Origin: Convolutriloba macropyga
Lineage: Eukaryota
Direction: 5' to 3'
DNA length: 64,000 bases
Assembly (NCBI RefSeq): GCF_964194025.1
Contig: NW_027451353.1
Span: 62,001 to 126,000 of the forward strand
This document shows positions 1 to 40,561 of the stretch, one piece after another. The first letter of the stretch is position 1. Every line of letters begins with the position of its first letter. The notes beneath the pieces were generated by a model. That model made no database searches. It saw only the letters and a list, made by a program, of their open reading frames with translations, and was not told the DNA's origin. The translations under genes and the position numbers were made by a program.

Positions 1-1850
1 TAACAATCCCAGATTTAAACAAAACCAGACTAGGTTTTACAAGTATTGCAAACGTTCAGGTCACACAATTTCATATTGCTTTAAATACAAAGACTTTATA
101 AACAAAAACCCGCCTCAAAATCGAGAAAAGTTCACAGATATTTATAAACGTAGTCGGAGCCATTCACCGAGTCAACAAAATTACAGATCAAACAATTATG
201 ACAATCAAAACTGTAGTGACCAACACAAAAATAATTATAACCAAAATCAATCAAATTATCGAAAGAACTCTAGGTCAGAATACCGACACCAATCACCATA
301 CCCATCAGACTCTTCAAACAATTAGCGATCATCATCCAACGATGGCCGGTCACAGGAACGACAAAGTAACTATGTAACAACTTTTATAGTGATAGCAATA
401 GGCAAAATAGTAGGGATAGACAGAGCAACGCTCCCCCAAGATCAGATAATTGGTATCGTGATAGGAGTAGGGACCAGGATCGTGATAGGACACCTACTAG
501 ACAAAGCAATGCTAATCATTCAAGAGATAGCAGTGATGGGCAAAGCCTTCGATTCCACTTTACCAGCGAAACTCCCGGAGGCTATTACAACGAGGACAAC
601 TACAACAAAGAGTATTTAAACTAGATCGGTCTCCGTTCATAAACACTACTAATAGCAAAGCAAGTTATTCACATATTTATTTTAATTTATATCAAACCAT
701 CCCAGACAAAAATAAAAATAACGGCTTAGAAACACAGTTTTTATTAGACACAGGAGCATCAAGCTCTATAATTAATTACTACAGTTACATTGAATTGTTG
801 AAAACACAATACTTTGAGTTGAAAGCTTCAAAAAATCATACTTTAATGGTTAATGATGAGAAACTAAAACTGCTAGGTCGAATAACTTTTATAACTTCTT
901 TCGACATTGAAGGAAAGTTACCAAGTGGAAGTTACCGCATGGCTTTCAGCCAAAGATGATTGCAAGCCAAACTTGTTGAGAATGGATTTCCACTGTAAAA
1001 ACCATGACACACCAAACAATTATGACAATCAAAACTGTAGTGACCAACACAGAAATAATTATAACCAAAATCAATCAAATTATCAAAAGAACTCTAGGTC
1101 AGAATACCGACACCAATCACCATACCCATCAGACTCTTCAAACAATTAGCGATCATCATCCAACGATGGCCGGTCACAGGAACGACAAAGTAACTATGTA
1201 ACAACTTTAATAGAGATAGCAATAGGCAAAATAGTAGGGATAGACAGAGCAACGCTCCACCAAGATCAGATAATCGGTATCGTGATAGGAGTAGAGACCA
1301 GGATCGTGATAGGACACCTACTAGACAAAGCAATGCTAATCATTCAGGAGATAGCAGTGATGGGCAAAGCCTTCGATTCCACTTTACCAGCGAAATTCCC
1401 GGAGGCTATTACAACGAGGACAACTACAACAAAGAGTATTTAAACTAGATCGGTCTCCGTTCATAAACACTACTAATAGCAAAGCAAGTTATTCACATAT
1501 TTATTTTAATTTATATCAAACCATCGGAGACAAAAATAAAAATAACGGCTTAGAAACACAGTTTTTATTAGACACAGGAGCATCAAGCTCTATAATTAAT
1601 TACCACAGTTACATTGAATTGTTGAAAACACAATACTTTGAGTTGAAAGCTTCAAAAAATCATACTTTAATGGTTAATGATGAGAAACTAAAACTGTTAG
1701 GTCGAATAACTTTTATAACTTCTTTCGACATTGAAGGAAAGTTACCAAGTGGAAGTTACCGCATGGGTTTCAGCCAAAGATGATTGCAAGCCAAACTTGT
1801 TGAGAATGGATTTCCACTGTAAAAACCATTGACATAAGCACTCCAAAAAT
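1..1850 (+). pseudogene. Gag C-terminal R/S/D/N-rich region plus retropepsin-type aspartic protease (two copies)
   Basis: TTATTAGACACAGGAGCATCAAGC encodes LLDTGASS(SIIN) at 741 and 1565. Upstream is low-complexity RDRSRDQDRDR-type coding sequence. Frameshifted. Confidence 0.8.
189..1834 (+). repeat. Tandem duplication of ~824 bp covering gag C-terminus and protease
   Basis: CAAACAATTATGACAATC occurs at 189 and 1013, and CACTGTAAAAACCAT at 991 and 1815 (offset 824). The copies are near-identical with scattered substitutions. Confidence 0.95.
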
Positions 1851-2651
1851 TGACTTGAAAACTTACCCTGAAGTAACCGTCGAACTATCTAGGTACCAAA
1901 CCAAAAGCTATTCGTTTGTTAGTTCCTTCAAAATTGCAACTCTTGATCAGCAGCTACCCTTAGCACCAAAATCAACTCGCGTAATATCAATTAGACAACC
2001 CAAACGAATTTTTCAGAAATTGAACCTCTTTTATAATCGGAAGTGGACTGCAAGCTCAAGGTATTTATACTCACAACGTTCAGTGTTTTAGAAAAGAAGA
2101 AGATCTACCAATAATGCCAAACAATGCTCAAAACAACAAGTTTGTCATTCATAAGGGTCCTATGGGGCACACTTTGGAAGACATTGAAGTTAAACAAGAC
2201 ATAGAATATTCTGTAGTTGACAACGTTGCATTCATAAACCACCTAATGAACACTGACACTAATTGGGATCAAATATTCCATGTTAACGAAAAGTAAGGTC
2301 CAAAAATTTCGAAAATTCAAAAATTGCTTTCAAACCAACAAAACCCCTGAAAAACAAAAGAAAACAGAAAAGCGCAAAAGACAGCAAGATTTTACCAAGA
2401 ACTACGAATTATAAACAGACTTTAGCGACGACCTTAAGGATCTTAAGCCACAATTAGAAACAACTGATGAGAACATCAGACCCGTTGAGCTTCCCAAAGA
2501 AAAACTTAACAGATTTGACAAAACCGATCAAGCGTTCCTCGAAGAATTTGATTTCAGTCAAGCTGACATCAGTGACGAAAACTTAGACAAATTACTGAGA
2601 ACTGTAATTAAAAATAAGGACGTTTATTCTAAACACAAATACGAGGTTAGC

Positions 2652-3583
2652 ATGATAAAGCAAAAATTTCATGTCAAACTTTTACCAAATACAACTTTAA
2701 CAAAACAGAGACCGTCCAAAGTACCGTTACATTATCAGGAAAAACAAGAAAACTTTTTGGAACAACTGTGTAAAACAGGTATAATCCGGGAAATGGGTAA
2801 TGATAAAGAAATGGGTTCAGAATTTATTAATCCAATCAGAATCCTACTTAAGGGGAACACAATAAAACTGATCGTAGACGCCCGATATTTGAATTCAATA
2901 ACAGATCTTAGCCGATTTTCATGGCCGCTCGAACCAATCGGAAGCCTATTAACTAGACTTAAAGGTAATTTCTTCACAACCAGTGATCTTTGTTCAGCTT
3001 ATATCCAAGTGCCTATAAATGAGGAAACCAAACAGCTCGTAAGTTTTGTAATTGGTCCAAAGCAATACACATTTGAACGCGGATTTAATGGACTATGCGG
3101 TCTACCTAATTTCTTCAGCCGTATAATGACTATTCATTTTGCACTATTAACCAAAAAAAAGCTATGACATACATTGATGACACCATCAAGCAAGAGCAAT
3201 ATGAAACCCAACTGTTTGAAATAATTGACAAGTACCATGAACTCTTAAGGAAATCAAGGTTAAAAGCTCAATCTGAAAAGACTAAATTTTTCCTTAGGAA
3301 AGTACAGTTCTTAGGACACGTAGAAGGTAAAGATGGAATGCAGCCAGTCAAGAGGCGAGTAGCAGATTTAAAAGCACTCAAGTCGCTTGAAAACAAACGT
3401 GATGTCATGAGAGTTATAGGTTACTTAGGATTCTACAGCATGTACATCAACAATTTGATCGTTGACTGCCAACCATTTTTTGAACTAACCCGCACAGAAA
3501 CTAAACTAGGTTTGTCTGGACAACGGAACACGAAAAACTGTTTAATGACATTCAAGACAGGATTAGCGAAGATAATATCTTAG
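2652..3583 (+). pseudogene. Reverse transcriptase (frameshifted)
   Basis: Motifs LIVDARYLN, FTTSDLCSAYIQVP, GLCGLPNFF, TYIDD, VQFLGH and GFYSMYI span ORFs 2652..3167 and 3164..3583. Confidence 0.93.
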
Positions 3584-4220
3584 CAATACCTGATACTAAA
3601 CACCCTTTCTACGTGCATGTAGACGCTCCTTCTAAAGGAGTAGGCTCATTTCTCGTCCAGAAATTTCCAGAAGGGAAACGAATAGTGTCTTTTAACTCTA
3701 GAATTTACACTAAAGAGGAACAAAAAATGAGCACACAGCACGCGAACTTTGCGGTGTAATATCTGCATTACAAACGTATGAGCCTTACTTAATTGGTTCT
3801 CCTCATCCCGTATACGTGTACATAGACGATAAGCCTTTAAGGTACCTATGGGGTAGACGAGGAAAATTCTCTCACAGGTTTTTCAGATACCAGTTAGTAA
3901 TTTCTCAATTTCAGAACTTGAAAATTATCTGGACCGAAGGAAAAAATTTAGCTTTTCTCGGCATTCTATTTCGTAATGTAAAAATTAAAGACCTTGACAA
4001 GTATCAACTTAAACACAAAAAGATACCAAAAGACATTAGTTTTTACGACGAGCATGGTAACAAGGAAAAATATTTCATTTTGCGTTATTATGAAAAGGGA
4101 CCAGCAGATGATTTTTTTCCAATCTTAAAACAAAGCTTAACAAGAATCGACAAATTTATTTTCAAAAACGACAAAATGGTGAAGCAAAAGTACGACAACC
4201 TTCAAAACCACCATAAATAA
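3584..4220 (+). pseudogene. RNase H (Ty3/Gypsy type), frameshifted
   Basis: Manual translation gives PDTKHPFYVHVDAPSKGVGSFLVQ...IVSFNSRIYTKEEQKMS, then YEPYLIGS..VYIDDKPL and EGKNLAF. Confidence 0.85.
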
Positions 4221-4770
4221 TATTTCCGAAGATTTCTCGCATGGTTCATCAATTAACCATTACAGACGTCACCGCGAACATGAAGTATCCCCTGTATCAG
4301 AACAGGAGGAGGACGAAATGTCTGACCACTATACAGAAATCCCTTCCTACCAGGAAGAGGAGACATCCAAACGATATTTTGATCCAATTTCGGAGTTTGA
4401 GCTGTTCAATGAGAACCAGCCGCCGAAATTAAATTTTGATGAACTCTACATTGATCAAAATAATACAACTGACTCGAGGTATAGGTTGCCATTCGAACAC
4501 GATAAAGTTTTTCTCGTGAAAAATAGTACATGTATAGATAAAACCGAATTAGCTAAAAAATTTCCCGAAAACCCAAAGTTAAAGATGCAAGAGAACTCAT
4601 CGATAAACTTACAACCTTCTCAAAGGAAATTGATCTAAATACTTCAGTATTTGTCAGGAACAATTAAAAGACCCTGTGATACGACAAATTTGCCAATTCA
4701 GGACGAACAATAACAAAGATGAGGAGAAAATTGAATTCCGACAATCCAGATGTTAAATATTTGAAAATTT

Positions 4771-6401
4771 GTGTACCACTGTCATTGTTCTTTAAAGTTT
4801 CACTTAGCTCATTGTGAACTGTCAGGTCATGGTGGATTAGATAAAACACTTGCTATAGTAAAAAAAAAATTTATTGGCCCGGAATGTATAAATGGATTGA
4901 AAACTTCAATCCAAAAACGGAGAGACATCCACAAAGCACCTCTTGAAAAATGGACTGATACAGTCCCATTCCCTTTTAATACAGTCTACATTAATCACAA
5001 GCGACCTTTAAATCCTCCATCGAACGGTAAACATGATTGCCTAGTTTTTGTCGACTCATTTTCACGTTTCATTCAGGTATACACTGTACGATCCACAGTT
5101 GCTGTAGATACCATAAAAGCTTTAGAAACATTTATTAAGTCTTTTGGAATACCACAAAAACTTGTTTAAGATAAGGGTTCCGCGTTCATGAACCAAGATT
5201 TTACGAGTTATATTCATGAATTAGGCATAACACCTGCACCTTGGACAGCTTATTCACCTTGGACTAATGGTAAAGTCGAGATCCAAAACAAACATCTAGG
5301 AGCACATTTCCCAATTTTTCTAGAACAAGCTCGAGGTCAATGGAATTATTTGGCACCAAAATTTGCTTTTTCTCATAACACGGTTCCAAACGGTAGTGCT
5401 GGAATCTCACCTTATGAAATTGTGTTCGGACAAAAACCACAGATACCTCTGTCACTTAAGTTATGGCTCCTACGAAATTCAGAACTCACATGCTCCTCCG
5501 AGTTTTGTAAAGACCTGCCCCTTCACAGGCAAACTTTGCAAACTTCGAAAAACACAAAAATTGACAAGCTCCTAAAACCTACCATAAACAATTCAAAGGT
5601 CATGCGTGAAAACCAATTTAAACAAATATACAATAACACCTATAAAAATAGCTTAGAAAACAATAACCGCGCACATAAAAACAGAAATAAACACAAGTTA
5701 GGTAAGCCACTGGATATTGGACAAAAAGTTTTAATTGAAAATCATCAAATTGAATTGGGAACGTCAAAAAAACTACATGAGCTAAGATCAGACCCTTATA
5801 CGGTAGATAAAAAATAACCAATGTGAACTACGAAATAAATTTAGATAACAACCCGGTTACCAGAAAAGTTGCTCATGTAAATCACGTAGTCGAGTACTAC
5901 CCAGCTACTGAAACTATACCAGAGTTAACCCTAGAATATGGTAGAGATAAAAATAATTGTTACACATTTTATAATAACTTGATAACAAGTCAAATGAATA
6001 AACTCAACAGTCCTTTGACTAAATTTTCGCTCCAAAGCCCAACTAACACCGAATTTTTCCCCGTGGAGATTTTCACAAGAGGAGATCCACCTGTGCAGAG
6101 CCTAGACCTTGATCGAACTCCCACCATTTTTGACTCTGGATTTAAAAAAGAAAGTTCAGGTAGCCGTGACAACTACCCTCTAGTTCCAATAAATCTGCCC
6201 AGTGACAGTCGAACAAGGAGCTCAACTCCTTGCAAGCTGAAAAATTCTAGAATACTTATAGACCCAAATTTAAGTCCTTTCCGCCCTATTAGATCGGAAC
6301 AAGGACCTTCTAATTTTCAAACTTTAGAAAATAATAATAATAGGCGAACTTCTAGTCACTTGACTAAGCCGCCATCAGGTTATCAAGCCGGATTTACTTA
6401 A
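4771..6401 (+). pseudogene. Integrase with GPY/F-like C-terminus and low-complexity tail
   Basis: HCELSGHGG (HHCC half), VFVDSFSRF, DKGSAF, SPWTNGKVE, SPYEIVFG, SDPYTV; interrupted by stops. Confidence 0.9.
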
Positions 6402-6506
6402 TTTTGATTTGAGATACTAGAAACCCAGTCAACATTTACTGGACGTGCCTATTACTACAATTCGTAGCCTTAACCCCTCGCTTGAAACGCTAAAAAAAAG
6501 AACAGA

Positions 6507-8760
6507 ATGAAAAGATATCCTTGTTTTGAAAAACTCTATTTTTCTTATTTAGTTATAAGTCTTTCCTACTTTTGTACTCCTTTTATAGTTATTAACTCTA
6601 CTGAACCTATCCTTGACGATATAAATGATGTATCTAGCAAACTTAGGGTCATTCGTTATGACTGTTCTAAAATGAAAGAAAACAAAATGTATGCTCTAAC
6701 ACAAGTTTCTCCTTGCAAAATCACACCCGAAAACATTCAGATGGTTGATACACATGTAACACTTTGTCAGCGGTCTTATCGGACTTTTGTCAAAGCTCTT
6801 ATGTGCAAGGTCACTGCGATGCTCATTCGTTATAATTGCGGAATGTTTTCCTATTCATCAATTCTACACAACGCTCCAATAATAACATACAAAATTACAG
6901 CTTCGCCTGAACAACGTTTAAATGCTAAAAAAACTGAAAAAATTATTGTTACAGAAATTGATGATGATGACATGGAAATTGACATAAAACATGGAATAAG
7001 AACTGTCTCTTATAAAAACCAGGGATTTGATCTTGAAGGTGAATCATCAACATCTTGTGATAAATTGTGGTCAAATTAAACATTTTTCTTTTGGAACCTT
7101 GTTGCAAGAAACCGTACTCTATATTGATCTTAATGACAGAACTGTCTATAACAGTCAAGGACTAAAATTTCCTTGTGCCCTCTCAGAAGGAGGTTGTCAT
7201 TCGACATCACTCGACTACTTTCCTTACAATTGGGAGGCACCGGAAAATTGTATAGTTACTAAAAGTTTTTCACAAAAAGCTAAAAAGCATAAACATGAAT
7301 ACGAACTTGGTAACGTACAGTATTTCATAGTGAGTGATGAAAAACCGGAGACGCCCTATGAAGGACCAGGAACGTTTTCTCCTGCTGAAATGGATATAAA
7401 AGTTAGAGTAGTCTATGAAAAAGAAATTGTGTGTGGAAAACCTGAGTTTATTTACAGAACAAATTTAGATTCTATATATGTACAGGCGGATTTAATATGA
7501 AGTCTGGCAAACCTTATAAGTCAAAAACTCAACAATTTTTTTCATAAACTTCGTATTGATCCTGACAACAGCCGAAGTGTAAATGGGTTTAATAGGAAGC
7601 CTTCAGATGAACAGATTCGAACATTCGAAAATGGTTTTGTTGCATGGGAACACTTAGACAAAGACAAGTTAGACTATGATCTTAACCTTGCGGTAAAAAT
7701 GCAATTTGTCATATGTCATAATTACATGCAAATGAAACAAGCATGGTTCGGTCATAGAGGAATGCAAACTTGATCGAACTCAAAAACAAATGATAGACAA
7801 AGATAAAAGAAAACAAATGATAACAAATGCAGACTGTCCAAAATAATCGTTTAGCTGGATACATATTAACTGGCAACTGCTCGATCTTCTTAGACACAGA
7901 TGGTAGCATAGGTTGGCTGTACCACTGTCCAAAACGAAACTCACCAATTAAGGTTCATGATCAGTGTTCTGATAGGATTCCTATTCACTATGATGATGAG
8001 ACAATGTTCGTCGACCCAATTACTCGACAAACATATCCATTTGCTAACGAAGTTAATTGTATTGGAGGCTACAAAACGCCTACCAATTAGGTATTGATAA
8101 TGATAATTCATGGTACCATTTGATACCAGCACTTGTTCCTTTACAACCGCCAAAATTATTCTCTTCAAGAGTTGTTAGTTCTGTTCCAAAATTTACCGGT
8201 TACGAATAACAACGTGCCGGAATTTACACACCAAATCAATTAAAATCGTTTTGTGACCATATCTTGCATTCGGAAGCATCAAAATCAGTTTTGACAAAAA
8301 ATTCGAGAGAAGTTCTAGAAAGAAGAAGTATAGACTACTCACAAAAAGGCATCTATGCGTCCGCGATGGGCATAAATAGACAAATTTATCTAGACTCTCT
8401 ACTCTCAACTACATTTTTTACGGAGCAGTTCAAAGGCACTTTTGGAATTATCACTTTCTATCTGTAAAAAATTGGAGTTTATTTTGCTTGTTTCTTGTGC
8501 ATAAAATTCCTTACTGATGTAATTGTAACTATCATTAGAGCTTTCGAAATCCACAAAATATCCAAAAAAATGGGTTTTTGGAAAACTGAATTAGGAGCAA
8601 TTTATTATATTTGTATTTTATCGTTCTTTACACCGGTATTTTCTAACAAAACCACACCATCGGATCCAGAAAACACCAATCATTTTTTACCGCTTAGTAG
8701 TTATCAACCTTACATCACAATAGAAAAAATTACAAATGCGTTGAGGATCAACCAAGGGAA
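6507..8760 (+). pseudogene. env: Env-like viral fusion glycoprotein (chuvirus-G / gB-like class III type, inferred), frameshifted
   Basis: N-terminal signal-like segment, then YDCS..MYALTQVSPC, CKV..YNCGMFS, CALSEGGC, YNWEAPENC, VCGK..IYRTN, WLYHCP and CSDRIPI..FVDPITR..C. Hydrophobic segments at ~8440-8640. Located directly after pol. Confidence 0.8.
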
Positions 8761-9017
8761 ACTAAAATTGATGAGCATTATCATACTGAAAATAACAAAC
8801 CAACATACCCAAGTTTTGAGCCATATCAACCACAACCACAAAATGATGCTACCATTTGAAGTGAGATGGCACCGTCTTGGGGCTGTAACCAAGAAGGAAA
8901 AATCATCCTTTTTATATAAAAAAATTACTTTGTCTCAAAACAACATAAAAATTATTTGTATTAGACCCTACCAATTAGTTATTATCTTGTTTAGATACAC
9001 CTCAAGGATGCTATGTT

Positions 9018-11257
9018 ATGCAGCCCAAATTCATTAAACAGACTAACACCTTATTCATTCGATTTGGACAATACATTGGACAAATCTTATCAACAAGTAC
9101 TTCTACTTTAGGAACTACTGTAACTATTAGAGTTTCATCTTTCTATTTCAGTGACCTTATTGATCTGGACGTACCGCACTCAAATTTTCAATATTTCTTG
9201 TTGTTAAGAGCCCTGGTTGATAACACAACTACATTTGTAAACATTGGAATCGAATACAAAATTGTTTCAAAGCGCCTCAAGTAAAACCTTGCTAGATTTT
9301 GAATTCCCTTGTTAGTTCAACATTGAGAGAAATGTGCAGATTCCTTTCTTTCTTTTTATTTCTTATAATCCAATTATGACTGTTTAATCGCAATTATGTC
9401 TATCTGGCTATTGCCTGAACTCTTCCCCTACTCCGATTGTGCTACAGGGAATCCTATTGAAAGATGATCTATAAATAGTAATCGTTGTCAATAATCCTAC
9501 TTTCAGAAGTAACTGGCACCTTTATATCATCTATCTTTACAAATAAGCATACGTCCATACACAGCTATGAAATGAAAAACAAACAAAATATTAACTAAAA
9601 CGCCTCCATTAACGTACTTTTTATTTCAAGATCGACTTGTTACAATCTATCAAATAAAGAAAACATTTGAAGAAAATCACGGAGCCATTTTCGCTCAAAT
9701 TATTATAAAATTTGAGTTTTGGGACACTTGGGTAACGACAGTGTCATTTTAACCCCTCATTCGTTGTATTAGAACTATTTCGTGTATTTAGCACAGTTTG
9801 ATCCTAATAGTTTGCGTAGTGAACTAGACCAGCAAACATGACTCATCTCACTAATAGAAAACTACAATTCAGAATCGGAAATCAAATTTTTGAGCTTTTA
9901 GCCTTATGCAATGTTTCTGCTATAAGTATAATGACTTTCGTGAAAAAGCCTATGGCAGATATTTACAGATTTTTAACAATATTCATTACCCATACTCAAT
10001 TCGCCGAATTCATCATTTTTCTAGCTTACAAACAGACCCGATATTTTAAAGTTCAACATCCAATCTACATTGCTTATGTACAATTCCAAACTATGATATT
10101 TGCTGTTAACAATAAAATTGTAGGGTTGCACCAAAATCAACGATCTTTCGATGCATACCCAATTCCCGTACCTACCATACAAATAACACTCAAAAAAGAT
10201 CCAAAATGAAAAATTTGGTTTTTTAAGTATTAACCCTCTCTCAGTCCATTGGAAATTCTTCCTCTTTATTCTAGAAAATCCAAACTGTGTACCTCACAAT
10301 ATTTATTTTGATCTGCCAAAAACTGATTCTTCCAAAACGATTCAATCACTAATGAGTTGGAAACAAAAACAATAATAATATTATCATACCAAAATTGCCT
10401 AGTACAAATTCAATTTTTTGAAAAATCATTTGTCACGACAAAATGCCACAGAGTAATCCCACAACTAATACTCCATTTTGAATATTTAAACACTTGGACT
10501 AATGGCAATATTACCTTAACGCCATCTTCCCCCTATTGGACATTTCTTATAAATATATCCCAGGCTTTAAGCGGCTCAAAAATCCCTTTTAATTTAGATC
10601 TTCTGTAATGCTGTTCCATTTTGGTGAGCGCCTAGTCAAAGTAGAGTCCCTCGAGAGATCGTTCACTGAAATTTCCACCGCAGAGATTAAACCCTGTATA
10701 ATAATCAATTATACAGACTACGAACATGGATGCGAGGGTTCTAATCGACTCACCATGTGAATGATGCACTGGTAAATTTTTCTAGCACTCATTGATATCA
10801 AAGAACACTTCCCAGTCAACTTGGGCGCTCTTGAGTAAAATAATTCAGTTTACAGAAAAAACTTTTTTCCCTTTAAACATTTTTTTCGCCAGCTCATTTT
10901 TTTCCCTTTCCATCTCTCTTTCTGTTAATTCATCTCTATTCAAATAAGTTAGTTACTTCCTCGTCGTTTTTTTTTGTGTTGTTAAAAACAATGATTTTAT
11001 TCGTTGGTAAGGAAAAAGTTAAAATTGTTAAAGTAGAAAGATGGTTAACTTTTTGTTACTTACAGTATGAATCCAGCAACAAAATAACTTATATGTTCCT
11101 AAGCACAGGTACCCTTAACCATTATTGCATTTATCCAGACGAGAAACACTGGAATCGCTTTTTTGCTATTGCAGATTTAAATGTAACTATCCCCAATGAA
11201 CTCAAATACCATGGATCAGAAGTCTCATGCCCAAATATCTCTGATTTGTCCATATAA
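9018..11257 (+). CDS. Tandem array of small (~80-95 aa) divergent paralogous accessory ORFs of unknown function; several frameshifted
   Basis: Shared pattern by eye: FLFQDRLVTIYQIKKTF (~9620), MIFAVNNKIVGLHQNQRSF (10093), LSYQNCLVQIQFFEKSF (10357 ORF), MLFHFGERLVKVESLERSF (10608) and MILFVGKEKVKIVKVERW (10991). C-terminal P-x3-[HY]W-x2-hydrophobic motif (NPLSVHWKFF, TPSSPYWTFL, YPDEKHWNRF). Confidence 0.65.
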
Positions 11258-11655
11258 TGGGAAACATTTTGAAAATATACTCTCAGCAACTACAAACTGA
11301 TAAAACCCCAATAATGGAATGCCCTATTTTTTACCTGCCTTGCCGTCAATTCAAAAAATTGCACAAAAACCCAAATGGTCAACCTCCCCATTTTGCTTGC
11401 ATCCCCTGTAGAAATGAGTTATTTAAATATTGGAATCAAGATAATTGCCCCATTTGCGTACCTCCCATTTATACAGTCACTAATTGCCATTATTTCCAGT
11501 GTAATACTTGTCAAGAAATCAAAAAGTTGTCCACTTGCCACAGTCATTTCAAAGACTTACACCCAAAAAAAACCTTTTGTTTGCAGTGTATGACCTTCAC
11601 AACTACAAAATGCCCTTTATGTAAACAAACAATTGACCCAAACAATCCGTGGTAA
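11257..11655 (+). CDS. Double RING-like zinc-finger accessory protein (copy 1), 132 aa
   Basis: HFACIPC..CPIC..YFQCNTC..H..FCLQC..KCPLCKQTI; open frame; starts MG; its ATG overlaps the previous stop (TAATG). Confidence 0.75.
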   Translation: MGNILKIYSQQLQTDKTPIMECPIFYLPCRQFKKLHKNPNGQPPHFACIPCRNELFKYWNQDNCPICVPPIYTVTNCHYFQCNTCQEIKKLSTCHSHFKDLHPKKTFCLQCMTFTTTKCPLCKQTIDPNNPW

Positions 11656-11693
11656 AATCTTCGATTCAAAATTTTGTTTGCAAACTATTCAAA

Positions 11694-11893
11694 ATGTTTA
11701 CACCTACATTACTTGATTTTTTATTAATGGCCCTCATGATCATGCAGCAGCCTTTTCTTTCGTTTTAACCATTTTCCTTGTAGCTGTAAGTATTCCTTTC
11801 AATTTTTTGATGTTAATAGTTATATTAGTAAAAAACCGAACAATAAAATCCCAAGGTAATCAACAACCAAATCCTCCAACCGTATCAGCTTAA
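11694..11893 (+). pseudogene. Small single-pass membrane protein ORF (frameshifted)
   Basis: Manual translation AAAFSFVLTIFLVAVSIPFNFLMLIVILVKNR...; frameshift in the T-run near 11720. Confidence 0.45.
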
Positions 11894-11925
11894 ACACAAT
11901 CGCCTCCAATGACATTCTTTCAAAA

Positions 11926-12306
11926 ATGAATACTATTGACAAAGAAACCAATACTGAAGAATCCAAACCGGTCACATTCATTTGCCTGTGCTGCAAACGC
12001 GCGAAACGATAGTTTTCAACAAAATAATATGAAAACTTCCCAAACGAATTACACCACGTGATGTGTCTGCTTTGTTATCAATATGTTATAAAAGATATGG
12101 GTTATGATTTTTGTACCAAATGCTCTAAATTTAATGTTATCTTTTCAATCCTTAACTGGTTTCAATGTGATATTTGCAGACAAACAAGATTTCAATACTC
12201 TGTTGCAAAAACATTTCATCACAGTGATCATAAGCCCATCAACTTTTGTAAATTTTGCGTAAAAGGTTACAACTTATGCCCTCTTTGCAAAAAAACAATC
12301 ACCTAA
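11926..12306 (+). pseudogene. Double RING-like zinc-finger accessory protein (copy 2), two in-frame stops
   Basis: ATG 11926 is in frame with ORF 12058: FICLCCK..HVMCLLC..FCTKC..WFQCDIC..FCKFC..LCPLCKKTI, which aligns with copy 1. Confidence 0.75.
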
Positions 12307-12312
12307 TCTAAA

Positions 12313-12450
12313 ATGCGTCCAAAAACTTCCAAAATTTTAATTCCTTTCCTGGTTTTACTTTTAGTCCACTTGATATCCCTAATCCAATTCAGTTTTTACC
12401 AGGAACAAGTCACCTTTTTCACCCTATTTCTTCACTACTCAGTGATATGA
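12313..12450 (+). CDS. Small hydrophobic ORF (45 aa)
   Basis: MRPKTSKILIPFLVLLLVHLISLIQFSF...; starts 6 nt after the previous stop and ends 4 nt before the next ATG. Confidence 0.4.
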   Translation: MRPKTSKILIPFLVLLLVHLISLIQFSFYQEQVTFFTLFLHYSVI

Positions 12451-12454
12451 CAAA

Positions 12455-12649
12455 ATGCACCCCATAATATTGTTTATTCTTTTATTTGCTCTGCTGAGCG
12501 TATTGGCAATATCATTTTTATCAACTATTATCTCCTTTATGCAATCGGCCAAATTTTTTCCAGATACGGAAGATGACCGATCTAGATCTCACAACAAAAA
12601 TATTTATCCTAATCTTAATTACCTTACTTGCCATATCGTTCCTCATTAA
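12455..12649 (+). CDS. Small single-pass membrane protein ORF (64 aa)
   Basis: MHPIILFILLFALLSVLAISFLSTIISFM hydrophobic stretch followed by a polar tail with IYPNL. Confidence 0.5.
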   Translation: MHPIILFILLFALLSVLAISFLSTIISFMQSAKFFPDTEDDRSRSHNKNIYPNLNYLTCHIVPH

Positions 12650-12718
12650 TCTCATCCTACTTCAATTTCTCGAAGGTTTTCCTGTTTTTGTCTAAGAAAA
12701 ATAAAAAACAGTCACTCA

Positions 12719-13090
12719 ATGGGTCTCTCACAATCCCTACTTGACAGTTTTCGTTGGCTCTATCCCAATAAGGACATTATTTGCACAATATGTTCGCTCA
12801 AAACCGTTATTGTAGAAAAACTAAACAAATGATTCCCCAAAGAAAATCCACACTATGTATGTATTCCTTGCAGAAAGGCCCTTTTTAAAAGATACTCAAA
12901 CCCTAAATATCCCATCTGTCTTCGACCCTGTCTTCCCGTCCCGATTCTACTTCCGATGCAATTTATGCAAAAAAAAGAAAACAGAATTAAGAGTAACAAA
13001 ACACCCACATTTTTCCCAACATGAGGATCGTCGATTCTGTCCAGTATGGATAAAAAAGCAGACAAAATGTCCCATTTGAAAAAATTTTTT
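12719..13090 (+). pseudogene. Double RING-like zinc-finger accessory protein (copy 3), N-myristoylation-type start
   Basis: MGLSQS..ICTIC..HYVCIPCRKALFK (cf. HFACIPCRNELFK), then a frameshift to YFRCNLC..RFCPV..KCPI*. Confidence 0.7.
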
Positions 13091-13422
13091 AGTCGACGTT
13101 GTTTAATAAACCAAAAACAACTCGAGTCAAAACGACCTTTTTTCACATTTTTCACCTTTTCCTCGGGAAGGGGTCACCTCAGCTTTCTCCAGCTTGCCCT
13201 CCCGGGCTTTAGAACCTACATAAGTTGGAATATCTAGCCAAAATTTCATCCATTTAATAATCTCCTTCATGGCCATTTACATAACAATCTTAATCTTATG
13301 CAACATATTTCAAATTCTTCTTTCCTTCCTTGAAGAGGGAATAAAGTTTATCTTATGGGCTTAAATCTACGGTGGAACACTAGCAGGATAATTGAAAAAT
13401 GATAAAAATAATCTCTTTCTTT

Positions 13423-13556
13423 CAGCTCAGCAAGTTTGTCTCCCCAGCTGCACGGGTCGTTCCAACCGTGTTAGTGTGACACACGCCCCAAGACTCACAC
13501 CTCCGGGCAGCGGAGAAAAACGTACTTGTGCCAGGGCTGCCCGCCTGGCATAAGTA
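13423..13556 (+). promoter_or_regulatory. Structured cis-RNA element: consecutive hairpins with complementary (kissing) loops
   Basis: 13-bp stem TACTTGTGCCAGG/CCTGGCATAAGTA (one G-U) with loop GCTGCCCG, complementary to CGGGCAGC (13504-13511) in hairpin CTCC..GGAG. Upstream stems CAGCT/AGCTG, CACGG/CCGTG and GTGTGA/TCACAC. Confidence 0.55.
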
Positions 13557-13773
13557 TAAAATTTTTTATTATTCCACCCTCTTTCATTAAATAAACTTTG
13601 CAGGTAGCAAAAAAACTTTTCTACCAAACTTTGATAAAAAATGCATTTAGCATTATAATTTGTAAAGAAAGCAGTTAGCAATAAAACCTTACAAGAACAT
13701 TTTTAGAATTGAATTCTTTTTTATATTAGCAATACATTTGCAAACATGAAATAGAAGCCATAATGTGTGATAA

Positions 13774-14996
13774 TTGAGGACACAGGCTAACCAAAAGAAA
13801 AAATTTTACATTATCAACAAGAAGCGGAAAGAACTAGAAATGGCAGCCAAGAAGATCCCAAGCTTCATTATTCCCGTTCAAAGTCAAACGCCGCACCATC
13901 TAACAATCAACAACAAGCACAGATCCATCAAACACCAATTCCCGCTTTCTCAAGCCCACCATTCAAACCTCGAATCACAGTAACCCAAACGGCCAAAAAC
14001 AGCTCAGAATTTTACCCACAATACAACTGACAAGTTAGCAGAAAGGGACCAATCACAACCCAACAAATTAGTAGTCACAAAAACAAAATTATTAAGCTTA
14101 TCAACATTGAAGATCTCGTTCCCGACGCTATCAGAAAAATACCTTCAGAAGGCTTGGAATTGCAGAAACCACGAGAGGAGAACATGGGCAAAGAGAACCC
14201 GAGGTACGTTAACACCCTTCTCTATTTCTTCAAACCAAAGTGAAACAAATTCGAGGTTGCTGATAAAATAAACATCATCCAGTTAAATGGACATCAATAA
14301 CTATTAGCCAACAGCGAAAAACTTCCAGTTCTAAAAACTTTCTCGCTTCCCACAGATAACAGCAAATAGAGAATTAAAAATCTTGACCCTAAGAAGGGCA
14401 CCTATATCCTTAGAAATAACTTGGTCGACGTATACATTGAAATCCCCTATGATGCAATTTCTGCTTTTCCTGTCGAGATGCCAGAACTGACGAATATCAA
14501 TACCAGTAAGCTAATAGAAGAAAACACCAAATTTAGTCAGGAACTATTTCAAAAGGAAACAGAGTTGCAAGAACTGCAACTGAAATTCGAACAACTAAAA
14601 ATGGAGTCGCAGAAACTACCAGAGGAGAAACAACAACCTAACGACTATTGGCAGCGCCAATGTGTCGTTGCCCATCAACTTCAAAAAACCAGCGAATCGA
14701 ACGCAAAAACAATGTTAAAAACGTTTTCTTTGAAACATTTAGAAATAACAAATGCCAACAAAAACCGGAGAAAAGAATCTGGAGCTAGGAAAGAAAATAA
14801 CTCAATTAATGAAGGAAAACGTAGAACAAAAAGCCAAAATTTCCGAACTCAAAAGAAAGGTAAAAATTACAAAAAACGACAGTCGATGGATAAAAACGAA
14901 CCTATTGAAGACGATATACAGAAAGTTCTTTTAATCGAAGACGATGACAGTCCAGTAACAAGCCCGGTCATCTTACCACCAGAATTCTTTAACTAA
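13774..14996 (+). pseudogene. Terminal accessory ORF with coiled-coil region, frameshifted
   Basis: Overlapping ORFs 13774, 14421 and 14752 with heptad-like E/K/Q/L-rich sequence (ELFQKETELQELQLKFEQLK; LGKKITQLMKENVEQKAKISEL). Confidence 0.5.
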
Positions 14997-15055
14997 CATG
15001 GTCACCACCCTTTGCGGTTTATTTTGCATCTCACCACTCCAGTTCTTTTACAGCT

Positions 15056-15190
15056 TTTTGCGATCTTTTTATAGCACAAATGTATCGCCTTTTGCGGTCT
15101 TTTTTATAGCACAACTTTATCGCCATTTGCGATCGTTTTTATAGCACAACATTATCGCCCTTTGCGATTGATTTTGTATTACGACGCCAT
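15056..15190 (+). repeat. ~35-bp tandem repeat in the 3' UTR of the retroelement
   Basis: About 4 copies of TTTGCG(A/G)TC..TTTTATAGCACAA...TATCGCC. Confidence 0.8.
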
Positions 15191-15367
15191 CAAGCCTCGT
15201 ATTTAACCAACTCCTGCAAACTTCGCAACCAACCTACATTGGCAACCTCCAACTCAATTGATTACAACCCCAATCAATGGAAGCTTGAACAAAACTCAGA
15301 ACTTACCTGACCTTCATTTAAAAGTTTTATATGATGTAGAATAATTTATTAAATCTGTTTCTCACTG

Positions 15368-15382
15368 AAAATTGGGGTGAGC
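15368..15382 (+). other. Polypurine tract (candidate)
   Basis: AAAATTGGGGTGAGC immediately followed by TGTA. Confidence 0.6.
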
Positions 15383-16704
15383 TGTAGTATTACGAGAGCC
15401 AATACAAATGAAAGAATAAATAATTTTGCATTACAACGAACGCTTTTAGGCGTTAATTAACCATTATATCGCTGCGCGCTGAACAAATTAACGCTTGTTA
15501 AGACTACCAGTACACAAGTATTTAAACTACTTAGATCGACTTATTTAAATTAACACAACTTTAGGCCTGGATCTCCTCGCTTATATCCAGGATAGAAAAT
15601 GTACGTTGTTGAGCGTAGGCGGTCTGTATAACCACACTTTCTTTTGATTTATATCACTTCAGCTTTTGACAGTTGCATTGCAGATCTCTTCCCCCAAGTT
15701 CAATAAGATGAAGCAGATTACTTCAGGGGAAAAGACAATAGAGTCTCATAAAAAGCCCCCAGGAAAACCATAATTGTTGCGGTTTTAGAAGAGGGGAAAA
15801 GCAGAAAACAGGCGCCTACGTGATCAATAATTGATGCTCTCAGCTTTTTAGATTTTTATTAATTTTTGGATTTTCAATCATTTTTCCTTGAGATAAAAAA
15901 GAGTTAATTCTCTTGCCTTCTCGGCCCATAGGAAAATGAAGAAGCACCTCACTATGAATGTGAGTTTGTGATTTGCTCCCCATTGGCCCAAATTGAGCTG
16001 AGATGAATTTGTAAATTCTCTCAGCGAAGTGGGACGGAATAAAGGTAGAGAGACAGAAACAAGAACCAGAAATCAGCTGCAGACAACTGCTTTCCTATTT
16101 TTTGATAAATAGCTCTAAATTCAGAACAGAGATTGCTTATAACTTTCAAACAGAAAATACTCAAAATACACAGTTTAAACAACTTAACTTACAATTTCTT
16201 CATTAAATCTTATAAGTTTTTTTCCCGTCTAAACTGAAAATCTAACCGACTAACAAGAAGAACTGAACGATCGCTACTCAGCTCATCTCGATATCACAAC
16301 AATGCAACTGGTAATTAGTAAGCTGTAACTTTATATTTATTTTTTATAAATTAAACACTTTCTGCCCCCCCCCCCCCAACAATTTTAAATTGAGACTTAT
16401 AGCACAGACTGGTCTTGGGCATATATCTTTGCCTTCGATTTGTTATATCTTTTGTGTCAAGTAAGACTGACATACATAAAAAGATCCCTTATCGTGTGAT
16501 CTGTAGCAGCCCAGCCTAATTTGATACATCAACTTAAGTTCTCTCCTGATCATCAGGCAAAACATCAATCATGAGCAAAATTTTAATTTGGTTTTAGCCA
16601 AAATTATCTATAATAGCTTGGTGACCACTACCAGTTGTCATAAACCGAAGTACTCCTTTTTAACGTCGCCAGTAAGTGTACAACAAAACAACAAACCACT
16701 TACA
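15383..16704 (+). repeat. Probable 3' LTR (right end tentative)
   Basis: Begins TGTAG after the PPT; candidate end ..CTTACA at 16704 (TGTA/TACA). The 5' LTR is outside the window, so this is unconfirmed. Confidence 0.45.
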
Positions 16705-19700: not shown

Positions 19701-20187
19701 TTCAGAAAAATCCTAATAACCTTCTCTCTTGATTTTCAACTTATTTGAACTTTGAAGTAGAAATTAATCAGTTTTTTTAATCTCATTCACATCAACAACG
19801 TTTTTGGCGACTTTGGTTTTATGAATCTATATTATTAAAACTTTGCCATGGACATCTGTATGCTTTTGATGTCCAGTATTTCAGTCAACTGCAGTCCCAG
19901 GTATTGTCAGATCAAACCAATTTTGTGCAGTCACAGTTTTCAATTAAAGATCAATTGTGCAGTTCAATAACTCTATTTTTCCCATAAGTATCTTTTCATT
20001 CCGAAAGCAAAACTTTAAGATTTTTTCTTGTCGTTTTTCGAACAAACTGTTCAGACTTTAAAAACAATTAGCAAAAAGTGAACTTGATAACTTGACTATC
20101 ATGCAGTTTAAATTACTACAATTATTATAGATACCGTTTTTTTATTATGAGATCGGATCCGTCATTTTTTGTTTAAAAAAAGCTCAC

Positions 20188-20440
20188 CTGGATTATTGGA
20201 CGGGGCACTGTGGTCTGTGTGGGGGTGTCTGCTCTCATCTGCCTCTTGGGTGGGACTGTGCTGTGTGATGAAACTCTTCTCTCTGGGGGTGGGTGTAATT
20301 GGGGGCAGGGGGTCCCTTTTGAGTGCAAATGTGTCCCACATAATGTTTTCAACACCAGCTTCCTTTGATTTGTTGATGCACTCTTCCAGGTAGCCCAGGG
20401 GGTCTTCTGGCCGAGAGTACATCAGACCAGTCAGCATGCT
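20188..20440 (-). CDS. AK5: Adenylate kinase 5-like, coding exon 2 (dimerization/docking domain)
   Basis: SMLTGLMYSRPEDPLGYLEECINKSKEAGVENIMWDTF..PLPPI resembles AK5 SLLNGLMCSKPEDPVEYLESCL..WDTF..LPPL. Acceptor TTCCAG at 20441-2 and donor GTGAG at 20187. Confidence 0.88.
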
Positions 20441-21439
20441 CTGGAATGTGAACAAATCAATACACAGAATCTCTTCATTCAAATTAGAATGAAAAAAATT
20501 TTAAACAGATAAAGTAACAATACTAATAATGACAAATTGTTGGTAAATAAATGGTCCCTAGACTCGAGAAACGGTACCATTTCGAAAATTACAATGTACA
20601 AATACATCAGAAAAAATTGTCGCTACAAGACACTAAAATGTAACCATAATCCTAACAATTAGGTATTTACTCAGCTATAGATAGGCACAACCACACTCGA
20701 CCGCAAAGTGGTGTAAAAAAACATGCTCGACCGAAATTGCCGAATACCTTTTTCTCAACCCTTATGATCTCTTGCATATTCTCAGATGCACAAAATTGGG
20801 TTGAACTGAAGTCAAATTATGAGACCAGGAAACAACTTTTAGCGCAACAACCTTTCCAACGAAATCAAAACGCATTCAAATTGAGTTTTTATCAACAACA
20901 GTTAAATTTGTTTTCCACAGTAAAAACTTTCCGCAGAAAATTATCAGTTCTTTGTCAATCACCTAAACAAAAAAAGGGAAAAATTTTGAAACATTAAAAA
21001 ACATGATTTTTCTTCTACTGTTAAACTGTTTTTTTTTACCGAGCTGGGGTTTCATTCTCTTATAACATTATTTGTTACTAATCCACTTCTCCTCTGAAGC
21101 TCCTAAAAAATTGAAAATCGGGATTTATCGATTTTTAACATGAATGAAGAAAACCATGTGAAAAAAAAACAATCTACCTGCATTTTTTTATTCTTTGTTC
21201 TGTTTGCTTTTTTGTTTCTCGAATATTATTTTCAGTAAAACGAAAACAGTACCCTGTTTTTTGTGTTGATTTTGGAAACCTATTTTCTCACGGGTAAACT
21301 CCTCAAAATAAAACAAAGATCTTGTTCAATATTTGTGGATATAAGCACCACTTCCCAAACAAGCAATTGTTGAATATCATTCATTGTTTAATTGATATAA
21401 GCATTATAATTCAATTCTGCAACTATCTCAAAAAAAGGG

Positions 21440-40319: not shown

Positions 40320-40561
40320 NNNNNNNNNNNNNNNNNNNNNNNNNNNNNNNNNNNNNNNNNNNNNNNNNNNNNNNNNNNNNNNNNNNNNNNNNNNNNNNNN
40401 NNNNNNNNNNNNNNNNNNNNNNNNNNNNNNNNNNNNNNNNNNNNNNNNNNNNNNNNNNNNNNNNNNNNNNNNNNNNNNNNNNNNNNNNNNNNNNNNNNNN
40501 NNNNNNNNNNNNNNNNNNNNNNNNNNNNNNNNNNNNNNNNNNNNNNNNNNNNNNNNNNNNN
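40320..40561. other. Assembly gap (N run)
   Basis: Run of N bases. Confidence 1.

What the first reader, a model, noticed from the sequence alone, without database searches (positions are those of the whole stretch)
9018..11257. Tandem array of a novel small-protein family
Seen: five clear paralogues (~9600, 10093, 10357, 10608, 10991) share F-x-[FYV]-x3-[LIK]V-x-[IVL]-x3-[KR][ST]F, a hydrophobic strand, and P-x3-[HY]W-x2-hydrophobic. ORFs 9018 and 9838 look like more distant members (IRFGQY/FRIGNQ; PHSNFQYF/THTQFAEF). Little DNA similarity remains, so the duplication is old and the copies diversified. Most members are hidden from the ORF track by frameshifts. Function unknown.
Basis: partly seen in the sequence, partly recalled or inferred. 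Interest (0 to 1): 0.85.

Follow-up and report, generated by a model that had tools for sequence, protein, structure and literature searches.

The report
Small-protein gene array inside a retroelement
The repeated small proteins are real and have no known relatives, but they are accessory genes carried between the envelope gene and the 3' LTR of a ~20-kb retrovirus-like mobile element; the window holds an old, broken copy.

Summary
Five of the seven claimed paralogues (A ~9614, B 10093, C 10375, D 10608, E 10991) form a true protein family. Their alignments are co-linear and significant, and the similarity appears only in the proposed reading frames, with no DNA-level repeat. ORFs 9018 (U1) and 9838 (U3) are real conserved genes, but no sequence test joins them to the family. 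A predicted structure gives a U3 relative the same strand-strand-strand-strand-helix order at moderate confidence.

The array is not a set of host genes. It lies between a chuvirus-type envelope gene (PF24664) and the 1.1-kb 3' LTR of a Ty3/gypsy-type element of about 19.9 kb, gag-pol-env plus more than ten extra ORFs. Twenty-two loci fetched from one public assembly carry this lineage, and the ORFs occur on up to 54 contigs.

In younger copies all seven ORFs are intact (76-94 aa), tightly packed with TAATG/ATGA stop-start overlaps. Between subfamilies pN/pS is 0.20-0.41. The window copy is 84-88% identical to these and has decayed, which explains the frameshifts.

The family has no Pfam, PDB-sequence or Foldseek match. 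A search of 1.84 billion proteins found 43 relatives, and those traced come from three assemblies. Biochemical function is unknown. The best guess is small soluble binding modules acting with the adjacent RING-like proteins.

The parts
3..5817 (+). Degraded gag (partial, cut by the window edge) and pol of the retroelement. RT fragment at 2652-3583, integrase at 4771-5817.
   Evidence: Pfam RVT_1, rve and Integrase_H2C2 fragments. Window 3-13223 aligns to intact copies L013/L003 at 84-88%.
6507..8860 (+). env-like gene, a class III fusion glycoprotein of the chuvirus/mononegavirus type, broken by frameshifts. The C-terminal membrane anchor is near 8560-8640.
   Evidence: PF24664 Monjiviricetes_fusion, E 2.8e-12 and 7.4e-5 on two pieces. 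Intact 802-806-aa homologues in L005 and L014.
9018..9284 (+). U1: accessory ORF, 94 aa when intact. Here it is cut six codons early by an in-frame stop at 9282-9284. It is a separate conserved small ORF, not a demonstrable family member.
   Evidence: An orthologue in the divergent lineage L025 is 25% identical, E 1e-7. hhalign against the family gave P>0.09.
9470..9477 (+). TATAAATA box in the U1-A spacer, about 140 nt upstream of unit A and conserved in L003. It may be an internal promoter element (inference only).
   Evidence: Sequence read.
9614..9840 (+). Unit A (family member, 80 aa when intact). In this copy the start codon is absent, there is a 1-nt deletion near 9732, an in-frame stop at 9770-9772, and a 1-nt insertion at 9834.
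   Evidence: The intact orthologue is L005:8994-9236.
9838..10092 (+). U3: accessory ORF, 79 aa when intact. Its start overlaps the end of A (ATGA). Here its terminal stop is missing, so it reads through into B as the 123-aa ORF 9838-10209. It is not a family member by sequence, but a relative has the same predicted secondary-structure order.
   Evidence: A U3-like sequence in L025/P0131 is 30% identical, E 2.6e-10. AF2 of P0131.
10093..10375 (+). Unit B (family member, 94 aa when intact). It is frameshifted by a 1-nt insertion at 10198 and 1-nt deletions near 10332 and 10364.
   Evidence: The intact orthologue is L005:9475-9759.
10375..10608 (+). Unit C (family member, 77 aa). The frame is open here but the start codon is absent. 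The listed ORF 10357-10608 begins at an upstream TTG.
   Evidence: P0001-P0005 are 73-87% identical.
10608..10838 (+). Unit D (family member, 76 aa). Its start overlaps the stop of C (TAATG). There are two in-frame stops, at 10758-10760 and 10773-10775.
   Evidence: Intact in 14 of the 15 copies examined.
10839..10990 (+). D-E spacer. It is pyrimidine-rich and is the least conserved segment of the cassette.
   Evidence: 60% identity with 46 gap positions against L005, compared with 84-90% for the ORFs.
10991..11257 (+). Unit E (family member, 88 aa), intact in this copy. Its stop overlaps the start of the next gene (TAATG).
11257..11655 (+). Cys1: a 132-aa Cys/His-rich protein, intact here, with a RING-like first zinc module and an N-terminal MG... 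motif. It is translationally coupled to E.
   Evidence: Eighteen invariant residues, 13 Cys and 3 His among them. The profile hits the TRIM32 RING at E 0.005.
11649..13079 (+). Remnants of the remaining accessory genes: hydrophobic o67 (11649-11768), Cys2 (12058-12306) and Cys3 (about 12855-13079).
14421..14996 (+). Remnant of the last accessory ORF (o413), the coiled-coil part.
15368..16531 (+). 3' LTR of the element. The insertion ends near 16531.
   Evidence: Window 15368-16531 aligns to L013 14480-15604. The same 1.1-kb block forms the 5' end of independent copies (L015 4409-5511).

Best explanation
**What it is.** The region is the accessory-gene cassette of a large LTR retroelement of Ty3/gypsy type, about 19.9 kb, that carries an envelope gene (an endogenous retrovirus-like element). 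The intact order is: LTR, three pre-gag ORFs, gag, pol, env, U1, A, U3, B, C, D, E, Cys1, o67, Cys2, Cys3, o413, LTR.

**The family.** A, B, C, D and E are one family of small soluble proteins (76-94 aa, acidic to neutral). Each starts at its own Met and is predicted to fold as a four-stranded beta-meander followed by one helix. The family arose by old tandem duplications. The A, B, C and D types are each kept in diverged lineages of the element. Purifying selection has acted on the ORFs during the element's spread, so they serve the element.

**The window copy.** It is an old insertion that has decayed neutrally, which explains the lost starts, frameshifts and stops.

**Inferred, not shown.**
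- The genes form two tight blocks, A-U3-B-C-D and E-Cys1, with spacings from a 17-nt overlap to a 15-nt gap, including TAATG/ATGA stop-start overlaps. They are probably translated from shared subgenomic RNAs by termination-reinitiation or leaky scanning.
- The proteins are probably non-enzymatic binding modules that act with the adjacent basic RING-like proteins. They could be adaptors that direct host or element proteins to ubiquitination, or assembly cofactors.
For: **Location inside the element**
- RT, integrase and PF24664 env lie directly upstream in the window.
- Window 3-16531 aligns to intact copies at 84-88%.
- The same gag-pol-env-small-ORF order appears in L001-L014, with different flanks beyond a common 3' end.
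- The 1.1-kb LTR is present at both ends.

**Real coding genes**
- All seven ORFs are open in most younger copies. There are 0 stops in frame against 3-9 in the other two frames.
- pN/pS between subfamilies is 0.20-0.41, binomial p from 5e-4 to 2e-10. Median pairwise dN/dS is 0.13-0.38.
- The ORFs are more conserved than the spacers and have far fewer indels.
- Paralogue similarity is frame-specific, and codon position 2 is more conserved than position 1, which is more conserved than position 3.

**Family and fold**
- The alignment has Met1 and one Trp invariant.
- The AF2 model of D has mean pLDDT 82.3 and pTM 0.69, with four strands then a helix.
- The B-type half of P0131 gives the same fold at pLDDT of about 90.

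**Old duplications kept**
- B-, C- and D-type clades have strong support (the A-type clade is weaker, 88/82) and each contains members of diverged lineages.
- L025, L024 and L023 carry 2-3 members in the same position.

**Coupling**
- TAATG is found at C/D in 17 of 17 copies and at E/Cys1 in 9 of 10. ATGA is found at A/U3 in 19 of 19. TAATG is also present in L025.

**Neighbours**
- Cys1-3 are paralogues with RING-like ligand spacing and weak RING profile hits.
- The order 'family member then Cys1-like' recurs on a contig from another assembly (L023).
- Family members have pI 4.2-7.9 and no hydrophobic segment. The Cys proteins have pI 8.2-9.6.
Against: - No transcript, protein or interaction data exist, so the translation mode and the biochemical role are inference.
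- pN/pS was computed only on copies whose ORFs are still full length. That selection biases the ratio downwards.
- The AF2 alignment consisted only of paralogues and near-identical copies.
- The RING assignment of the neighbours is weak: best PDB profile E 0.005, and Pfam RING E 0.4.
- E is full length in only 8 of 15 copies.
- The host organism is unknown to me.
Confidence: 0.82

Rival explanations
1. It is a tandem array of host small-protein genes that happens to lie next to a retroelement.
For: All units lie on one strand and several start with Met.
Against: The array sits between env and the 3' LTR. It is present in the same order in all 14 loci fetched through the C and D proteins (L001-L014), which lie on different contigs with unrelated flanks. 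In the window it is 84-90% identical to those copies. All four relatives whose context was fetched are also in element contexts.
Confidence: 0.03
2. It is a decayed non-coding tandem repeat in the element's 3' region, and translating it gives spurious protein-like similarity.
For: The period is roughly regular at about 250 bp, and this copy has many stops and frameshifts.
Against: No DNA repeat is detectable. Similarity exists only in one frame pair. The ORFs are open in younger copies and pN/pS is 0.2-0.4. The predicted fold is confident.
Confidence: 0.02
3. The units are domains of one larger repeat protein or polyprotein, made by frameshifting or readthrough and then cleaved. They are not separate small proteins.
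For: Natural fusions exist: P0110 (C-type plus D-type, 156 aa), P0113, P0131 (U3-like plus B-type, 158 aa), and the window's own U3-B readthrough.
Against: In intact copies the units use all three frames with stops between them. Every unit keeps an invariant Met1 that is part of the first strand. The fusions retain that internal Met, as expected from loss of a stop codon.
Confidence: 0.05
4. The proteins are PUR-repeat-like nucleic-acid binders. They would pair up to form PUR domains and bind the element's RNA or DNA, for example for export or packaging of the long genomic RNA.
For: They share the strand-strand-strand-strand-helix order of a PUR repeat. PURA and Pur-alpha entries appear among the best Foldseek rows. 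Human PURA repeat I-II is rank 1 for the two-unit model at E 0.07. Borrelia Pur-alpha appears.
Against: TM-scores are 0.2-0.36 and no E-value falls below 0.06. No member hits a PUR family in Pfam. The members are acidic to neutral, which suits nucleic-acid binding poorly.
Confidence: 0.08

Closest known systems
Extra (accessory) ORFs of LTR retroelements and complex endogenous retroviruses. Examples: extra ORFs in bdelloid rotifer LTR elements (PMC5408684), accessory ORFs of giant planarian Burro elements and of fish foamy-like ERVs (review PMC6431247).
   Same: The ORFs lie downstream of env inside the LTRs. They have no role in the core gag-pol machinery, enlarge the element well beyond 10 kb, and are kept across copies.
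   Different: Here one accessory gene has expanded into five diverged tandem paralogues, alongside a second three-member Cys-rich family, with stop-start overlaps. The sequences match no described accessory ORF. I searched the paper library and read only text passages found by term search. No such array turned up, so absence from the literature is not proven.
Env-carrying Ty3/gypsy 'errantivirus-like' elements of metazoans, and retroelements that captured a chuvirus-type glycoprotein (PMC13524379, PMC7642597).
   Same: gag-pol-env order, Ty3/gypsy-type RT, RNase H and integrase domains, and an env matching PF24664.
   Different: As described in the passages I read, those elements are gag-pol-env only. 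The authors state that they did not search for other ORF arrangements. This element adds three pre-gag ORFs and at least eleven post-env ORFs.
Termination-reinitiation at overlapping stop/start signals (UAAUG/AUGA) in eukaryotic viruses: influenza B segment 7, calicivirus VP1/VP2, hypovirus CHV1, victoriviruses. This comparison rests on my own knowledge.
   Same: The same overlap signals sit at unit junctions and are conserved across copies and lineages.
   Different: Nothing here shows that reinitiation occurs. The upstream ORFs are about 80 codons long, and no upstream ribosome-tethering motif was sought.
PUR repeat (Pur-alpha).
   Same: About 70-80 residues with four antiparallel strands and then a helix.
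   Different: There is no significant sequence or structure match, and the proteins are acidic.
Multigene families of large DNA viruses: tandem, diverged small paralogues used against host defences. This comparison rests on my own knowledge.
   Same: Tandem duplication and deep divergence of small genes without cellular homologues inside a mobile or viral genome.
   Different: The carrier is a retroelement. The paralogue types are stably retained across lineages, and overall selection is purifying rather than showing rapid turnover.

Membership tests
Accessory cassette of an env-carrying Ty3/gypsy-type LTR retroelement | The genes lie inside the element, between env and the 3' LTR, in independent insertions. 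| tested here: met
   The order is the same in L001-L014. The flanks diverge only beyond a shared 3' end. The window aligns throughout.
Accessory cassette of an env-carrying Ty3/gypsy-type LTR retroelement | gag, protease, RT, RNase H and integrase are present in Ty3/gypsy order. | tested here: met
   Pfam families PEG10_N-capsid (faint or weak on the main lineage, unmarked on the related L026), gag-asp_proteas, RVT_1, RT_RNaseH, Integrase_H2C2 and rve occur on single ORFs of up to 1630 aa.
Accessory cassette of an env-carrying Ty3/gypsy-type LTR retroelement | Long terminal direct repeats. | tested here: met
   L015 4409-5511 (a 5' end next to unrelated flanks) matches the 3' ends of L013, L005 and L014 at 89-97%.
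Accessory cassette of an env-carrying Ty3/gypsy-type LTR retroelement | Target-site duplication and a tRNA primer-binding site. | not tested
   No fetched locus spans a whole insertion with both flanks.
   Met for A, B, C, D and E. Not met for U1 and U3, with P>0.09 and P>0.5.
   D and the B-type unit give four strands then a helix with confidence. The U3-like half of P0131 shows the same order at pLDDT of about 70, but no superposition could be computed.
PUR repeat / Pur-alpha | A sequence-profile match to the PUR family. | tested here: not met
   No Pfam hit for any of 22 members at E up to 10. No PDB sequence hit.
PUR repeat / Pur-alpha | Structural superposition at fold level (TM above about 0.5). 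| tested here: not met
   The best TM to Pur-alpha entries is 0.35-0.36 for one unit and about 0.2 for two units.
Termination-reinitiation (UAAUG-type) coupled genes | Overlapping stop and start codons at gene junctions, conserved. | tested here: met
   TAATG in 17/17 copies at C/D and 9/10 at E/Cys1. ATGA in 19/19 at A/U3. TAATG also in L025.
Termination-reinitiation (UAAUG-type) coupled genes | Demonstrated reinitiation, and an upstream ribosome-tethering element. | not testable with these tools
   This needs reporter assays or ribosome profiling.
RING-type E3 ligases (for the neighbouring Cys1-3 proteins) | A cross-brace of eight Cys/His ligands and a profile match to RING domains. | tested here: inconclusive
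   The invariant C/H pattern is compatible. PDB profile hits are TRIM32 RING 0.005, RLIM 0.04 and RNF4 0.19. Pfam RING hits reach only E 0.4.

The most novel reading that the evidence does not exclude
An invertebrate 'complex retrovirus' encodes its own ubiquitin-targeting toolkit. A set of sub-functionalised small four-strand-plus-helix proteins (A-E, perhaps also U3) would act as interchangeable substrate adaptors for three element-encoded, partly myristoylated RING ligases. The proteins would be made in fixed ratios by stop-restart translation and used to disable host restriction or silencing factors.
Probability: 0.15. Interest if true: 0.8.

Novelty: new variant of a known kind. Interest (0 to 1): 0.6.

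Why it matters
Envelope-carrying Ty3/gypsy elements are usually described as three-gene elements, in contrast to the 'complex' vertebrate retroviruses with accessory genes. This element has about 14 extra ORFs and appears recently active. Single protein sequences occur on up to 54 contigs, and 90%-identity clusters hold 38-158 variants. At least seven of the extra ORFs are under purifying selection. Five of them form a new fold-level family with no relatives outside this clade of elements.

The element offers a system for asking how retroelements acquire and expand accessory genes. It could show whether stop-restart translation is used to express them, and which host pathways an invertebrate endogenous retrovirus must manipulate.

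For annotation there is a practical consequence. Gene callers will report such cassettes as 'orphan' host gene clusters.

Tried and rejected
- **Extra remnant unit.** A possible unit in the D-E gap (window ~10830-10950, 'IIQFTEKTFF') was rejected. The family profiles did not detect it, and intact copies have a non-coding spacer there.
- **'No LTR'.** My first tail-versus-head comparison found none because I had taken the head to begin after the LTR. Loci with true 5' flanks showed a 1.1-kb LTR.
- **Circular contig L003.** An extrachromosomal virus reading was rejected. The 18,783-bp contig equals the internal region plus one LTR, and L013 shows two elements sharing an LTR. It is a collapsed repeat.
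- **Family membership of other ORFs.** The pre-gag ORFs G1, G2 and G3 showed nothing against the family. G1 and G2 are paralogues of each other.
- **Chromodomain, COMM, SH3-like or OB folds.** Weak Foldseek rows only, or no row at all: E at least 0.06 and TM at most 0.51 on about 48 residues.
- **No result.** Rfam scan of the window and tRNA scan found nothing. Paper searches for the assembly accessions found nothing. The host organism was not identified.
- **L001 versus L002 for unit C.** pN/pS was 8.9, but it rests on 17 differences and is not significant by my hand estimate.
Full report
**1. What is in the window**

They are U1 9018-9284, A about 9614-9840, U3 9838-10092, B 10093-10375, C 10375-10608, D 10608-10838 and E 10991-11257. 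No DNA-level direct or tandem repeat exists there.

I joined the pieces only with X at each break and compared them by Smith-Waterman against 500 shuffles.

| Pair | z |
|---|---|
| A-C | 15.6 |
| C-D | 8.3 |
| A-D | 5.4 |
| B-D | 4.8 |
| D-E | 4.5 |
| U3-E | 3.3 |
| U1 with any unit | below 1.3 |

A profile of A+C+D searched against all 2,790 six-frame segments of the window ranked E and the C-terminal piece of B as the two best non-members. The similarity is frame-specific: only the proposed frame pairs score, and nothing scores on the reverse strand. Aligned codons are most alike at position 2 and near random at position 3. The copies therefore diverged as proteins.

**2. Context**

Directly upstream lie fragments of reverse transcriptase and integrase, then a frameshifted gene matching PF24664, the fusion glycoprotein of chuviruses and other Monjiviricetes, at E 2.8e-12. 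Downstream lie three Cys-rich ORFs that resemble each other. The whole region has the composition of an AT-rich, repeat-rich eukaryotic genome.

**3. Other copies**

A word-indexed protein search with C found five 77-aa proteins at 73-87% identity. Their contigs, and contigs found through exact-sequence look-ups of the neighbouring ORFs, all come from one public assembly (ENA analysis ERZ25071359). They show one architecture:
- three pre-gag ORFs (85, 78 and 124 aa), gag (444 aa), pol (1630 aa) and env (802-806 aa, PF24664);
- U1 (94 aa), A (80), U3 (79), B (94), C (77), D (76) and E (88);
- Cys1 (132 aa), a hydrophobic 67-aa ORF, Cys2 (125-127), Cys3 (126-130) and a 413-aa coiled-coil ORF.

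Copies share a common 3' end and then diverge into unrelated flanks. The last 1.1 kb is repeated at the 5' end of independent insertions, so it is the LTR. The element is about 19.9 kb long.

An 18,783-bp 'circular' contig at twice the usual depth (L003) equals the internal region plus one LTR, so it is a collapsed repeat.

Clusters at 90% identity hold 38-158 different sequences per ORF, and single sequences occur on up to 54 contigs. The element is abundant and was recently active.

The window copy aligns to these from position 3 to 16531 at 84-88%. It is an older, decayed insertion. Its breaks are:

| Unit | Breaks in the window copy |
|---|---|
| A | no start codon; two 1-nt indels; in-frame stop at 9770-9772 |
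| B | three 1-nt indels |
| C | no start codon |
| D | stops at 10758-10760 and 10773-10775 |
| U1 | early stop at 9282-9284 |
| U3 | no terminal stop, so it runs into B |
| E and Cys1 | intact |

**4. The family**

With intact sequences, BLASTP links all five units co-linearly: A-C 1e-13, C-D 3e-10, D-E 3e-7, A-D 3e-7, B-C 2e-6, B-D 1e-5, and A-E and B-E about 1e-3. hhalign of per-unit profiles agrees.

The alignment has an invariant Met1 and an invariant Trp. Conserved features run in this order:
- a hydrophobic pair and a [KR]-[ST]-F motif at the end of the long second strand;
- a Pro before the third strand;
- P-x-S-x-[HY]-W-x-[FY]-F at the start of the helix;
- a late P-x-x-L.

U1 and U3 are conserved genes with orthologues at 25-30% identity in a diverged lineage (L025). 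They show no similarity to the family, even against a 53-sequence profile.

**5. Selection**

In a young copy each ORF has no stop in frame, against 3-9 in each other frame.

Between subfamilies, pN/pS over the concatenated units is as follows:

| Comparison | pN/pS | Binomial p against neutrality |
|---|---|---|
| L005-L009 | 0.20 | 2e-10 |
| L005-L010 | 0.23 | 8e-9 |
| L005-L001 | 0.24 | 2e-8 |
| L005-L002 | 0.41 | 5e-4 |

Per-unit medians are 0.13-0.38. The ORFs are 84-93% identical with almost no indels between diverged copies. The three spacers are 60-89% identical with many indels.

One caveat applies: only full-length ORFs entered the pN/pS counts.

**6. Structure**

AlphaFold2 with the family alignment gives D a mean pLDDT of 82.3 and pTM of 0.69. 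The model has strands at 2-5, 8-21, 27-37 and 43-49 and a helix at 55-63.

P0131 is a natural 158-aa fusion of a U3-like and a B-type unit. Its B half gives the same fold at pLDDT of about 90. Its U3-like half shows the same order of elements at pLDDT of about 70. That hints that U3 is a very distant relative, but I could not superpose the two halves.

Foldseek found nothing significant in the PDB or in BFVD. The best E-values were 0.063 and 0.013, with TM at most 0.51 on partial alignments. PUR-repeat proteins recur among the weak rows and share the topology, but TM is only 0.2-0.36.

No Pfam family and no PDB sequence matches. The members are acidic to neutral (pI 4.2-7.9) and lack any hydrophobic segment.

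**7. Distribution**

A full HMMER scan of 1.84 billion representative proteins with the family profile found 43 proteins at E below 1e-3, all 49-162 aa long.

The four whose contexts I fetched lie just after env, or before a Cys1-like gene, in related elements. They come from three assemblies: ERZ25071359, ERZ25878734 and ERZ17086273.

A tree groups the sequences into A-, B-, C- and D-type clades. Each clade contains members from diverged lineages, so the duplications are old and the types are retained.

A more distant element with 44% env identity, in NCBI assembly GCA_013332775.1, has o413-like genes after env but no member of the small family.

**8. Gene packing**

In intact copies A and U3 overlap by 17 nt. 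U3-B and B-C are 15 and 8 nt apart. C/D and E/Cys1 overlap by one base as TAATG.

These junctions are conserved: 17/17 and 9/10 copies for the two TAATG junctions, and 19/19 for ATGA at A/U3. TAATG recurs in lineage L025. Larger spacers precede U1 (129 nt), A (302 nt, with a conserved TATAAATA) and E (138 nt, pyrimidine-rich).

From established knowledge of UAAUG/AUGA stop-restart signals in several eukaryotic RNA viruses, I infer coupled translation from a few subgenomic RNAs. This is not shown.

**9. Most likely function**

Shown: these are element-encoded proteins kept by selection.

Inferred, with low confidence: they are small binding modules that work with the adjacent proteins. Cys1-3 are basic and have 18 invariant residues, 13 Cys and 3 His among them. 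Their profile weakly hits RING domains of TRIM32, RLIM and RNF4. E is coupled to Cys1, and the same gene order recurs in another assembly.

The rivals are set out separately. The host-gene and non-coding-repeat readings are contradicted.

**10. Comparison with the literature**

Capture of extra ORFs by LTR elements, giant gypsy-like elements and env capture from mononegavirus-like viruses are all known (PMC6431247, PMC5408684, PMC13524379, PMC7642597). In the passages I read, the survey of env-carrying Ty3/gypsy elements states that other ORF arrangements were not searched for. I found no description of a tandem multi-paralogue small-protein cassette in such elements.

I therefore rate this a new variant of a known kind. 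The family is new, and its placement, expansion and packing are unusual. The category, accessory genes of a retroelement, is established.

**11. Limits**

- The host is unknown.
- There are no expression data.
- U1 was not folded.
- No site-level test for positive selection was run.
Broken genes were read only with X at the breaks.

Noticed in passing
window 11257-13079 (Cys1 11257-11655, Cys2 12058-12306, Cys3 ~12855-13079); L009 10623-12463: A second tandem family of three Cys/His-rich proteins of about 125-132 aa, with 18 invariant residues (13 Cys, 3 His) and weak RING-domain profile hits. Cys1 and Cys3 begin with MG..., a myristoylation-like start that recalls small viral RING matrix proteins (my own association).
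   Followed up: partly
window 11649-11768; L009 11060-11263: A 67-aa ORF with a very hydrophobic core (Kyte-Doolittle 19-residue maximum 2.93) lies between Cys1 and Cys2. It may be a small membrane protein. It is truncated in the window.
   Followed up: no
window 14421-14996; L014 13056-14297; L026 9882-12095: The last accessory ORF (413 aa, coiled coil) has homologues after env in a distant relative in NCBI assembly GCA_013332775.1, which lacks the small family. It is therefore the older, more widespread accessory gene.
   Followed up: partly
L013 17126-18274; L003 8523-10939: Three ORFs lie upstream of gag (85, 78 and 124 aa). The first two are paralogues (hhalign 1.2e-9). They are preceded by 104-bp tandem repeats in the leader. 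The window copy is cut before this region.
   Followed up: partly
L010 and L011 (same contig, ctg36442): Inside one insertion the block 'env 3' half - U1 - A - U3 - B - C - D' is amplified three times in tandem.
   Followed up: no
window 54464-58600: A second, different Ty3/gypsy-type pol ORF (1378 aa: RVT_1, RNase H, integrase) appears largely intact. It lies between two blocks of G/T-rich satellite (48.9-52.5 kb and 59.7-64 kb, with repeat units of about 15-44 bp and longer nested periods).
   Followed up: no
window 28860-38400: A 368-bp tandem repeat grades into about six copies of a 1.41-kb higher-order repeat at 92-100% identity.
   Followed up: no
window 45148-45618 and 20162-20482 (-): Possible host gene fragments: a SET-domain piece (E 1e-5) and a 106-aa ORF without a Pfam hit. 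An N run lies at 40320-40561.
   Followed up: no
L001 vs L002, unit C (L001 10001-10234): 16.5 non-synonymous against 0.5 synonymous differences between two older copies of C. The counts are too small to be significant, but they differ from all the other comparisons.
   Followed up: no
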